63,963 nt of DNA, filler included, from Hyphochytrium catenoides (GCA_900088475.1; 20 parts of 20 records of this genome joined end to end with filler, not necessarily neighbours in it), one strand, 5' to 3'; counted from the first letter of the whole stretch, positions 57,996-59,103 are shown. Notes: generated from the sequence alone by a model not told the origin. Numbers and translations: made by a program.

Positions 57996-59103
57996 GGAGC
58001 TCTCCGGCCTTGATGTACGCCTTCAGCACCTCAGAGCAGGTGATTTTACTGGGCTTCACGCCAGCCTCAGGCATGCGCTGGTACAGGATCTCCTCCACTG
58101 TCTGCAACTGACCCATAGACCCATAGCCTCCCAGGAGCAGGTTGAAGTGCACACCATCCTCCCTCACTCCTAGGGATGGCATGCCCTCACGCAGAAACAT
58201 CTCTGCCTTCTGGAGCTCTCCAGCCTTGATATACGCCTTCAGCACCTCAGAGCAGGTGATTTTACTGGGCTTCACACCAGCCTCAGGCATGCGCTTGTAT
58301 AGGATCTCCTCCATTGTCTGCAACTGACCGATAGACCCATAGCCTCCCAGGAGCAGGTTGAAGTGCACACCATCCTGCTTCAGTCCTAGCGATGGCATGC
58401 CCTCACGCAGAAACATCTCTGCCTTCTGGAGCTCTCCAGCCTTGCTATACGCCTTCAGCACCTCTGCGCAGGTGATTTTACTGGGCTTCACGCCAGCCTC
58501 AGGCATGCGCTTGTACAGGATCTCCTCCATTGTCTGCAACTGGCCCATAGAGCCATAGCCTCCCAGGAGCAGGTTAAAGTGAAAATCAGTTGGCTTCACT
58601 CCTAGCGACCGTATGCCCTCACGCAGAAACATCTCTGCCTTCTGGAGCTCTCCAGCCTTGATGTACGCCTTCAGCACCTCAGAGCAGGTGATCTCATCGG
58701 GCTTCACGCCAGCCTCAGGCATGCGCTTGTACAGGAGCTCCTCCATTGTCTGCAACTGACCCATAGACCCATAGCCTCCCACGAGCAGAGTGAAGTGAAT
58801 ATCAGTTGGCTTCACTCCTAGCGACCGTACGCCCTCACGCAGAAACATCTCTGCCTTCTGGAGCTCTCCAGCCTTGATGTACGCCTTCAGCACCTCACAA
58901 CAGGTGATCGCATCAGGCTCCACCCCAGCCTCCGGCATGCGTTGGTACAGGATCTCCTCCACTGTCTGCAACTGGCCCATAGACCCATAGCCTCCCAGGA
59001 GCAGGTTAAAGTGAATATCAGTTGGCTTCACTCCTAGCGACCGTATGCCCTCACGCAGAAACATCTCTGCCTTTTCCAGCTCTCCGGCCTTGATGTACGC
59101 CTT
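57996..59103 (-). CDS. Pentatricopeptide-repeat-like protein: array of alternating near-identical 36-aa motifs (72-aa / 216-nt unit, ~5 units), open at both ends
   Basis: The whole contig is one open frame. Motif A DIHFNLLLGGYGSMGQLQTVEEILYQRMPEAGVEPD and motif B EITCSEVLKAYIKAGELQKAEMFLREGIRSLGVKPT fit the PPR consensus (F/YN.L...Y...G....A......M...G..PD). Confidence 0.9.

What the first reader, a model, noticed from the sequence alone, without database searches (positions are those of the whole stretch)
57996..59103. TALE-like PPR array: near-identical 36-aa repeat pairs that vary mainly at the RNA base-specifying positions
Seen in sequence: the whole 1.1-kb contig is an intronless tandem array with a 216-nt unit made of two alternating motifs. 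Each motif is 36 aa rather than the canonical 35, and copies are nearly identical at the DNA level. The residues at position 5 / last position run A1 N/D, B1 C/T, A2 T/D, B2 S/T, A3 N/S, B3 A/D, A4 N/S, B4 S/D, A5 N/S. Positions 1-2 also vary (DI, DF, GV; AI, EI, KI), while the helical scaffold changes little. Established knowledge: positions 5 and last (with 2) form the PPR code, where ND=U, TD=G and NS=C. Natural PPR repeats are normally highly degenerate, not clonal. Inference: this may be a recently amplified, recombination-shuffled, modular RNA-recognition system, a natural 'designer PPR' analogous to TALE repeats with variable di-residues. Both contig ends break inside the array, so it is longer than shown and may be multi-copy.
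Basis: partly seen in the sequence, partly recalled or inferred. Interest (0 to 1): 0.85.

Follow-up and report, generated by a model that had tools for sequence, protein, structure and literature searches.

The report
Repeated, code-variable PPR protein array
This 1.1-kb piece is a fragment of a real RNA-binding-type (PPR) gene built from five copies of a 72-residue double motif that differ mostly where PPR proteins read RNA bases, and it belongs to a large family with no database relatives; similar arrays turn up in other organisms, so it is unusual rather than unique.

Summary
The minus strand of 57996-59103 is one open frame of 369 codons. It encodes a tandem array with a 216-nt (72-aa) unit made of two different 36-aa PPR motifs, 5.1 copies, no indels. 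Pfam, NCBIfam, PDB and fold searches all say PPR, and designer PPRs are the best matches.

The units are not clonal. DNA identity is 82-96% and dS is about 0.22. The scaffold is under purifying selection (dN/dS 0.18). Positions 2/5/last and the inter-motif junction evolve at dN/dS about 1.1-1.2, and the enrichment is significant (p 0.0006-0.012). About half of the variable codons lie elsewhere.

The source organism's own runs hold hundreds of short variant contigs, so the family is highly multi-copy. Variants come as cassettes that fail the four-gamete test. That fits recombination, but a chimeric assembly would look the same.

No relative above 34% identity exists in any searched collection. 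However, other natural PPR arrays with near-identical repeats varying at 2/5/last do exist (Symbiodinium, Rhodiola, prokaryote-like metagenome contigs).

Gene ends, targeting, expression in the source organism and RNA binding remain unknown. Verdict: a new variant of a known kind, of moderate interest.

The parts
57996..59103 (-). Open reading frame through the whole piece (369 codons, first codon at 59103-59101, last at 57999-57997). It is a tandem PPR array and is cut at both ends by the contig edges.
59020..59103 (-). Partial B motif (B0, positions 9-36); last residue T
58912..59019 (-). Motif A1 (36 aa), position 5/last = N/D, positions 1-2 DI
58804..58911 (-). Motif B1 (36 aa), C/T, positions 1-2 AI
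58696..58803 (-). Motif A2, T/D, positions 1-2 DI
58588..58695 (-). Motif B2, S/T, positions 1-2 EI
58480..58587 (-). Motif A3, N/S, positions 1-2 DF
58372..58479 (-). Motif B3, A/D, positions 1-2 KI; carries the second junction cassette (MPSLGLKQD)
58264..58371 (-). Motif A4, N/S, positions 1-2 GV
58156..58263 (-). Motif B4, S/D, positions 1-2 KI; second junction cassette (MPSLGVRED)
58048..58155 (-). Motif A5, N/S, positions 1-2 GV
57997..58047 (-). Partial B motif (B5, positions 1-17), position 5 = S; cut by the contig end

Best explanation
The piece is an internal fragment of a P-type pentatricopeptide-repeat (PPR) gene from a large, lineage-specific family in an unidentified eukaryote whose relatives turn up in soil samples. 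Two already diverged 36-aa PPR motifs (A and B, about 30% identical to each other) were duplicated in tandem as a 72-aa unit at least five times. The helical scaffold has since been held by purifying selection. The residues that face the RNA in known PPR structures (position 5, the last position, position 2) and the neighbouring inter-motif loop have been free to change or driven to change. They differ between units as short cassettes. Most likely the protein binds single-stranded RNA one base per motif. A motifs (Asn or Thr at 5; D, S or N last) would read mainly pyrimidines, and B motifs (Ser/Ala/Cys at 5; T, D, N or S last) mainly purines. New specificities would arise by unequal crossing-over or gene conversion among the many near-identical units, as described for restorer-of-fertility-like PPR genes in plants. 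Shown: PPR identity, repeat architecture, coding constraint, site-specific excess of change, high copy number. Inferred: RNA binding, the reading of the code, recombination as the generator, any biological role.
For: PPR identity: Pfam PPR_3 2e-34 and PPR_2 1e-33; TIGR00756 PPR 2.7e-46 with 9 stretches. Best PDB sequence matches are designer PPRs (5i9f, 6.7e-63) and PPR10. Foldseek hits of the AF2 model are all PPR solenoids at probability 1.0. Coding constraint: only 33 codons change amino acid against 47.4+-3.5 expected for the same 68 substitutions placed at random (p=2e-4), with a third-position excess of 32/68. dN/dS is 0.36 overall and 0.18 in the scaffold. Site-specific change: dN/dS is 1.19 at positions 2/5/last and 1.14 in the junction; permutation p=0.0006-0.012; multi-nucleotide codon changes occur at A5, A36, B1, B5, B35 and B36. 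Alphabets at 5 (N, T, S, A, C) and last (D, S, T) largely fit the PPR code: ND=U, NS=C, TD=G, SN=A, SD also predicted (PMC4837458). Variant contigs from the organism's own runs add N and S at the last position, and a third in-frame junction cassette (KPS|LM) on an unchanged scaffold. Multi-copy: 918 and 398 short contigs of two runs of the source organism lie on the piece, 298 and 128 of them at 99% identity or more. Mosaic: 42 of 171 informative site pairs fail the four-gamete test. Analogy: RFL genes show diversifying selection at 5/35 and motif-level recombination (PMC5075784).
Against: dN/dS near 1 at the code sites is equally expected from relaxed constraint on a loop. Thirteen variable codons lie outside positions 1/2/5/last. 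B-motif codes C/T, S/T and A/D are not among the well-defined code pairs. In the AF2 model (single sequence, pLDDT 74), helix a of the glycine-rich A motif is only partly formed. The order of units in a 1.1-kb contig of a family with hundreds of variants may be an assembly chimera: no laid record spans more than about 260 nt. There is no evidence of transcription in the source organism. Only one 231-nt contig (97%) from an RNA-type run of another organism and one 173-nt contig (about 91%) from a soil metatranscriptome were laid. The N- and C-termini are missing, so targeting and catalytic domains are unknown.
Confidence: 0.6

Rival explanations
1. Functional PPR scaffold whose variation is neutral. 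The protein is a real helical-repeat protein (RNA- or protein-binding), but the junction loops and position 5 vary simply because they are the least constrained sites. There is no selection for new RNA specificities and no TALE-like modular system.
For: dN/dS at code and loop sites is about 1.1-1.2, the neutral value. Neighbouring non-code loop positions (B28-29, B33-35, A1, B1) vary as much as 5/last. Helix-b surface sites A20 and A26 also vary.
Against: Residues at 5 and last largely stay within the alphabet used by the PPR code (N/T/S and D/N/S/T, with A and C in B motifs), even with 2-3 nucleotide changes per codon. The same 2/5/last pattern recurs in independent near-identical arrays of other organisms.
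Confidence: 0.2
2. Decaying, satellite-like amplified DNA derived from a PPR gene. It would be a high-copy tandem repeat that is no longer expressed, with the open frame a remnant of recent amplification.
For: Very high summed depth and hundreds of variant contigs. CpG observed/expected is 0.43, as in methylated repeats. There is no transcript evidence from the source organism. P(no stop) under random placement of the 68 substitutions is still 0.11.
Against: Replacement changes are significantly fewer than random (p=2e-4) and third positions are favoured. Scaffold dN/dS is 0.18. There are no indels in 5.1 units. Among the changes listed for the family, the only indel is a 1-nt deletion restored 3 nt later, and none of the 40 listed variants makes a stop. 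Related short contigs occur in RNA libraries.
Confidence: 0.12
3. Assembly artefact. The contig is a chimeric path through a collapsed repeat graph, so this particular series of code residues (and the apparent shuffling) exists in no single molecule.
For: No record spans more than about 260 nt. 514 of the 918 laid contigs fit two places of the piece. Joints that skip 440 or 268 nt, or go back 77 nt, are seen in the contigs. The contig is short and ends inside the repeat at both ends.
Against: This affects only the order of units, not the existence of the family, its motifs or its variants. Each local segment is backed by contigs at 99% identity or more in two runs (298 and 128 contigs), though the best DNA holder may be the data the contig was assembled from.
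Confidence: 0.08

Closest known systems
P-class PPR proteins (e.g. maize PPR10) and consensus-based designer PPRs (dPPR, cPPR)
   Same: Same fold family by sequence and predicted structure. Tandem helix-hairpin motifs with N/T/S at position 5 and D/N/S/T at the last position. Like designer PPRs, the repeats share one scaffold and differ at the code positions (PMC4837458).
   Different: Motifs are 36 aa, not 35. Two different motif types alternate (72-aa unit). The A motif has an unusual glycine-rich helix a (GGYGSMG). Identity to any known PPR is at most 34%. The array is natural and multi-copy.
Restorer-of-fertility-like (RFL) PPR genes of flowering plants
   Same: A rapidly evolving P-class subfamily with high substitution rates at code positions within otherwise conserved motifs, and with motif-level duplication, unequal crossing-over and recombination creating new RNA specificities (PMC5075784). 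Here there is the same site pattern and a mosaic of cassettes.
   Different: In RFLs the similarity is between paralogous genes, and repeats within one protein remain diverged. Here the repeats inside one array are 82-96% identical in DNA. There is no detectable orthology to RFLs. Organism, genomic clustering and organellar target are unknown.
Other natural PPR arrays with near-identical internal repeats found here: Symbiodinium sp. Y106 P0165, Rhodiola kirilowii P0086, P0070 (NCBI record without a name), and metagenome proteins P0145, P0050 and P0061
   Same: Runs of 6-13 repeats with about 74-91% self-identity over a 144-aa window at the repeat offset. Position 2, 5 and/or the last position are among the most variable columns: N/T at 5 and D/N/S at last in most of them; N/S at 5 in P0061; D/G/N/S at last in Symbiodinium.
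   Different: Single-motif periods of 32-35 aa instead of a 72-aa double motif. Unrelated scaffolds (at most 34% identity to the query). Three sit on compact, prokaryote-like contigs and one carries a TIR domain. I found no paper describing them as a class.
TAL effectors (TALE) of Xanthomonas/Ralstonia
   Same: Analogy only: near-identical tandem repeats in which a few hypervariable residues per repeat set nucleic-acid base specificity, with evolution by repeat recombination.
   Different: Different fold family, and TALEs bind double-stranded DNA rather than single-stranded RNA. Pfam gives no TAL effector match. Variation here is spread over a roughly 10-residue junction plus position 5, not a di-residue, and the repeats are far less uniform than TALE repeats.
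PLS-class PPR editing factors (P-L-S triplets; LS-type in Physarum)
   Same: Alternation of motif variants of different type, including 36-aa 'long' motifs (PMC12787238; PMC4758236).
   Different: No 31-32-aa S motif. The period is 72, not about 101-102. Both motifs align along their length to P-type motifs. The C-terminus (E/DYW) is not available.

Membership tests
PPR protein family (Pfam clan of PF01535/PF13041/PF13812) | Significant match of tandem repeats to PPR profile HMMs above the curated cut-offs | tested here: met
   PPR_3 117.9 bits (cut-off 25), PPR_2 115.5 (30), PPR 86 (25), PPR_1 60.5 (23.8). TIGR00756 152.9 bits with 9 stretches. TPR models score far lower.
PPR protein family | About 35-aa helix-turn-helix motifs stacked into an alpha-solenoid | tested here: met
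   36-aa period for each motif. The AF2 model is all-helical with paired helices per motif. Top 40 Foldseek PDB hits are almost all PPR proteins at probability 1.0, but global TM is only about 0.35-0.4 and the model is of moderate confidence.
PPR protein family | Base-specifying residues at position 5 and the last position drawn from the PPR code alphabet | tested here: met
   A motifs: N or T at 5; D or S last (N in family variants). B motifs: S/A/C at 5; T or D last (N and S in variants). Code per PMC4837458. The C/T, S/T and A/D pairs are not well-defined codes.
PPR protein family | Sequence-specific binding of single-stranded RNA | not testable with these tools
   Needs a binding assay.
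PPR protein family | Organellar (mitochondrial/plastid) targeting of most members | not testable with these tools
   The N-terminus lies outside the contig, and no longer relative was found in any collection.
PLS-class PPR editing factors | P-L-S triplets (35/35-36/31-32 aa) followed by E/DYW domains | tested here: not met
   The period is 72 aa = 36+36, with no short motif. The C-terminal domains cannot be examined.
Restorer-of-fertility-like (RFL) PPR clade | Excess replacement change at code positions in otherwise conserved P-type motifs, with recombination between copies | tested here: met
   dN/dS 1.19 against 0.26 elsewhere; p=0.0006-0.012; 42 of 171 site pairs incompatible. This is a behavioural resemblance, and assembly chimerism could mimic the recombination signal.
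Restorer-of-fertility-like (RFL) PPR clade | Phylogenetic membership in the angiosperm RFL clade | tested here: not met
   The best matches anywhere are 23-34% identical generic PPRs from varied taxa.
TAL effectors | 33-35-aa TAL repeat (Pfam TAL_effector) with a repeat-variable di-residue at positions 12/13 | tested here: not met
   No TAL effector family appears among the Pfam hits at E up to 1. Variable sites are spread over the junction and position 5.

The most novel reading that the evidence does not exclude
The organism carries hundreds of near-identical PPR double-motif units that work as a naturally 'programmable' RNA-recognition repertoire. New base-reading strings would be generated continuously by exchange of short junction cassettes between units and genes. 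The repertoire would be used in an arms race against selfish RNAs (organellar elements, viruses or transposon transcripts), making it an RNA-targeting counterpart of TALE or NLR-type diversification. The TIR-PPR protein with the same kind of repeat (P0050) hints that such arrays can be wired to immune-type signalling.
Probability: 0.15. Interest if true: 0.85.

Novelty: new variant of a known kind. Interest (0 to 1): 0.5.

Why it matters
Natural PPR motifs are textbook 'degenerate' repeats (PMC4837458). Programmable PPRs had to be engineered from consensus scaffolds. A natural family that keeps one scaffold and changes mainly the base-reading residues, in hundreds of copies, would show how RNA-binding specificity can evolve quickly by repeat shuffling. 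It would supply a second, 36-aa double-motif scaffold for design. It would also point to an unrecognised conflict (organellar, viral or transposon RNA) in a soil eukaryote. Unrelated near-identical PPR arrays exist in a dinoflagellate, a flowering plant and prokaryote-like contigs. This suggests a recurrent but, as far as my searches reached, undescribed mode of PPR evolution.

Tried and rejected
1. Looked for relatives that would give gene ends or the organism. Word-index protein searches with the whole fragment, with two units and with one unit found only generic PPRs or nothing. An exhaustive HMMER search of 1.84 billion representatives gave a maximum of 34% identity. The exact-protein look-up found nothing. 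Protein-pattern scans of metagenome, GTDB genome and viral contigs found nothing. An exact 22-mer scan of metagenome and viral contigs also found nothing.
3. ESM Atlas gave only generic PPR fragment clusters.
4. Rfam gave no RNA family on either strand, so a structured-RNA reading was rejected.
5. TPR or SEL1-type protein-binding repeat: rejected because the PPR models score far higher.
6. Plus-strand ORFs of 48-66 aa: rejected as repeat shadows, since the minus frame is open end to end and shows coding constraint.
7. Organism guesses: Physarum, because of its rich PPR set and fragmented assembly (PMC4758236), and moss- or dinoflagellate-like codon usage. These could not be tested, because run labels are coded.
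8. Literature searches for described natural near-identical PPR arrays returned nothing relevant.
9. The second half used a wrong frame for the window. It was discarded and redone.

Full report
**What is there.** The piece 57996-59103 is a single tandem array. TRF gives period 216 nt, 5.1 copies, 92% matches and no indels. It is the minus strand, which is open for all 369 codons from 59103 to 57997, so the frame is cut by both contig ends. The plus strand has only 48-66-aa ORFs. No Rfam family matches either strand.

**Identity.** The translation is unambiguously PPR.
- Pfam: PPR_3 2e-34, PPR_2 1.1e-33, PPR 6.5e-25, all far above their cut-offs. TPR models are marginal.
- NCBIfam: TIGR00756 PPR 2.7e-46 with nine stretches.
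- PDB sequence search: the best matches are the consensus-designed proteins dPPR-U10/U8C2 (5i9f, 5i9g; E about 1e-62), then maize PPR10.
- Structure: a single-sequence AF2 model (pLDDT 73.9) is an all-helical repeat. Its Foldseek matches are designer PPRs, PPR10 and mitoribosomal PPRs at probability 1.0. Global TM is only about 0.35-0.4, and helix a of the A motif is poorly formed.

**Architecture.** The 72-aa unit consists of two different motifs of 36 aa each. Motif A is the DIHFNLLLGGYGSMGQLQ type and motif B is the xITCSEVLKAYIKAGELQKAEMF type. A and B share 11 of 36 residues (counted on the output), which is the usual divergence between neighbouring PPR motifs. The array therefore arose by tandem duplication of a pair of motifs that had already diverged. 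Against 35-aa designer motifs, each has a one-residue insertion in or just after helix b.

**How similar are the copies, and where do they differ.**
- Unit pairs are 82-96% identical in DNA. Synonymous divergence is about 0.22, so they are similar but not clonal.
- Twenty of 72 codon columns vary in amino acid and 14 more vary only synonymously.
- The 68 differences from the unit consensus favour third positions (32). They change only 33 codons, against 47.4+-3.5 for random placement (p=2e-4). This is a coding sequence under constraint.
- Nei-Gojobori dN/dS is 0.36 overall and 0.18 for the scaffold. It is 1.19 for positions 2/5/last and 1.14 for the junction (33-36 plus 1-2).
- Permutation of codon columns gives p=0.0006 (2/5/last) and p=0.0016 (5/last) for minimum nucleotide changes, and p=0.003 and p=0.012 for amino-acid states.
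- Codons with two or three nucleotide differences are concentrated at A2, A5, A36, B1, B5, B35 and B36 (also A26 and B29).

The variable zone is broader than a di-residue, though. It is a junction cassette running from B28 to A2, a second one at A36/B1, position 5 in both motifs, and a few helix-b sites (A20, A26).

**Cassettes and mosaicism.** Variants fall into discrete haplotypes:
- the B-to-A junction reads IRSLGVKPT|DI (or DF) in three units and MPSLG(L/V)(KQ/RE)D|GV in two;
- A36/B1 reads D|A, D|E or S|K;
- A20/A26 reads V..Q or M..K.

These splits conflict with one another, and 42 of 171 informative site pairs fail the four-gamete test. That is what recombination or gene conversion among units would produce. 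It is also what a chimeric assembly path through a repeat family would produce.

**The family in the raw data.** Two runs of the source organism (coded organism A) hold 44% and 37% of the sampled words.
- When laid on the piece, 918 and 398 short contigs (about 130-260 nt) align. Of these, 298 and 128 are at 99% identity or more, and more than half fit two places. Summed word depths reach 1e4-1.6e5 and 1.6e2-8e3.
- If the listed low-depth contigs are taken as roughly single-copy (an assumption; no baseline could be laid), the genome would hold several hundred to about a thousand units.
- Forty of the 89 variant sites were listed. They map mostly to replacement changes on the same scaffold and none creates a stop. 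They add Asn at the last position of both motif types.
- A contig present in both runs carries a third in-frame junction cassette, KPS|LM, flanked by unchanged scaffold.
- The only indel among the listed changes is a one-base deletion restored three bases later.
- No record spans more than about 260 nt, so the order of units in this contig is unverified.
- RNA evidence is thin. One 231-nt contig at 97% was laid from an RNA-type run of another organism, and one 173-nt contig at about 91% from a soil metatranscriptome. A second soil metatranscriptome holds 6% of the words. Soil and rhizosphere DNA metagenomes hold 6-7%. Transcription in the source organism is therefore not shown.

**Relatives.** None was found.
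- An exhaustive HMMER scan of 1.84 billion representatives returns 12,974 PPR proteins, but none is above 34% identity.
- Word-index searches with 369, 144 and 72 residues find nothing close.
- Metagenome, GTDB and viral contig scans and the exact-product look-up are empty.

The family is an orphan PPR subfamily, probably because its arrays collapse into contigs too short for gene calling.

**Is a near-identical natural PPR array unprecedented? No.** I screened the 167 retrieved PPR proteins for self-similarity. The median best self-identity over a 144-aa window is 0.33, but several reach 0.74-0.91 at a one-motif offset. These are Symbiodinium sp. Y106 P0165 (35 aa), Rhodiola kirilowii P0086 (35 aa), P0070 (35 aa), and metagenome proteins P0145 (33 aa), P0050 (32 aa) and P0061 (34 aa; best offset 68, i.e. 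two motifs). In these arrays, positions 2, 5 and/or last are among the most variable columns, typically N/T at 5 and D/N/S at last. Lycophyte and fern proteins show duplicated 101-102-aa PLS triplets. The phenomenon therefore recurs across lineages. I found no paper that treats it as a class. The nearest described concept is the RFL clade, with diversifying selection at 5/35 and motif-level recombination (PMC5075784).

**Most likely mechanism.** The fragment belongs to a sequence-specific single-stranded-RNA-binding protein. With the established code (ND=U, NS=C, TD=G, SN=A, SD predicted for G; Asn at 5 prefers pyrimidines; PMC4837458), the A motifs read U, G, C, C, C. The B motifs carry small residues at 5 (S/A/C). 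Hydroxyl residues at 5 go with purines; A and C at 5 are not covered by the defined code. B4 (S/D) would read G, while C/T, S/T and A/D are uncertain. New strings would be produced by unequal crossing-over or gene conversion among the many units. RNA binding, the code reading and any arms-race role are inferences.

**Rivals.**
- Neutral loop variation on a constrained scaffold: dN/dS of about 1 cannot exclude it.
- A silent, methylated satellite-like remnant: CpG observed/expected is 0.43, but the coding constraint argues against it.
- A chimeric contig: this affects only the order of units.

**Verdict.** The piece is a new variant of a known kind: a P-type PPR with a 36+36-aa double-motif unit, unusually homogeneous repeats, high copy number and no database relatives. 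Interest is moderate. The evidence rests on one short, possibly chimeric contig of an unnamed organism, and comparable arrays exist elsewhere.

Noticed in passing
L001:307-4308 and L002:293-4294 (protein P0050): A 1333-aa metagenome protein joins an N-terminal TIR_2 domain (6.5e-16) to at least 13 near-identical 32-aa PPR-like repeats that vary at positions 2, 5 (N/T) and last (D/N/S). It sits on a compact, prokaryote-like contig, 6 nt from a HAD hydrolase gene. A TIR-PPR fusion suggests an immune-type RNA sensor or effector.
   Followed up: partly
L003:2170-4362 (protein P0145): A 730-aa metagenome protein has about 10 near-identical 33-aa PPR repeats with T/N at position 5 and D/N at last. 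It lies on a 5.7-kb contig with small genes and a phage-integrase fragment just upstream.
   Followed up: partly
L004:133-2742 (protein P0061): An 869-aa protein has about 10 near-identical 34-aa PPR repeats of a scaffold resembling motif B here (SLIDAYGKAGDLKRAEEIF), varying at position 2 and last (D/N). Its neighbours (RDD family, TPR/HTH protein) look bacterial.
   Followed up: partly
protein P0165 (Symbiodinium sp. Y106): A dinoflagellate PPR protein has about 10 repeats of 35 aa at about 90% self-identity, whose most variable column is the last position (D/G/N/S). It is followed by a cytochrome b5-like segment (4.5e-05).
   Followed up: partly
proteins P0018/P0167 (Parashewanella curva) and P0070: A gammaproteobacterial protein of about 1300 aa is the second-best hit (1e-75) and has an 85-aa internal period at 83% self-identity. 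P0070 combines a semi-homogeneous PPR array with a C-terminal SET domain (3.8e-18).
   Followed up: no
window 57996-59103: CpG observed/expected is 0.43 despite GC3 of 0.70. Codon choice favours G-ending four-fold codons but GAT and TTT. This is compatible with a methylated repeat in a eukaryotic nuclear genome, and no taxon could be assigned.
   Followed up: partly
window 58609-58612: One family variant in run X1 has a 1-nt deletion at 58609 and a C inserted behind 58612, so the frame is restored within one to two codons. This is consistent with selection for an open frame.
   Followed up: no
window 58912-59019 and the other A motifs: Helix a of motif A is glycine-rich (LLLGGYGSMG) and is only partly helical in the AF2 model, unlike motif B. 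The two motif types may differ structurally.
   Followed up: no
runs X1 and X2: Both runs of the source organism have the same longest contig, 53,978 nt. This may be an organelle genome or another high-copy element that could help identify the organism.
   Followed up: no
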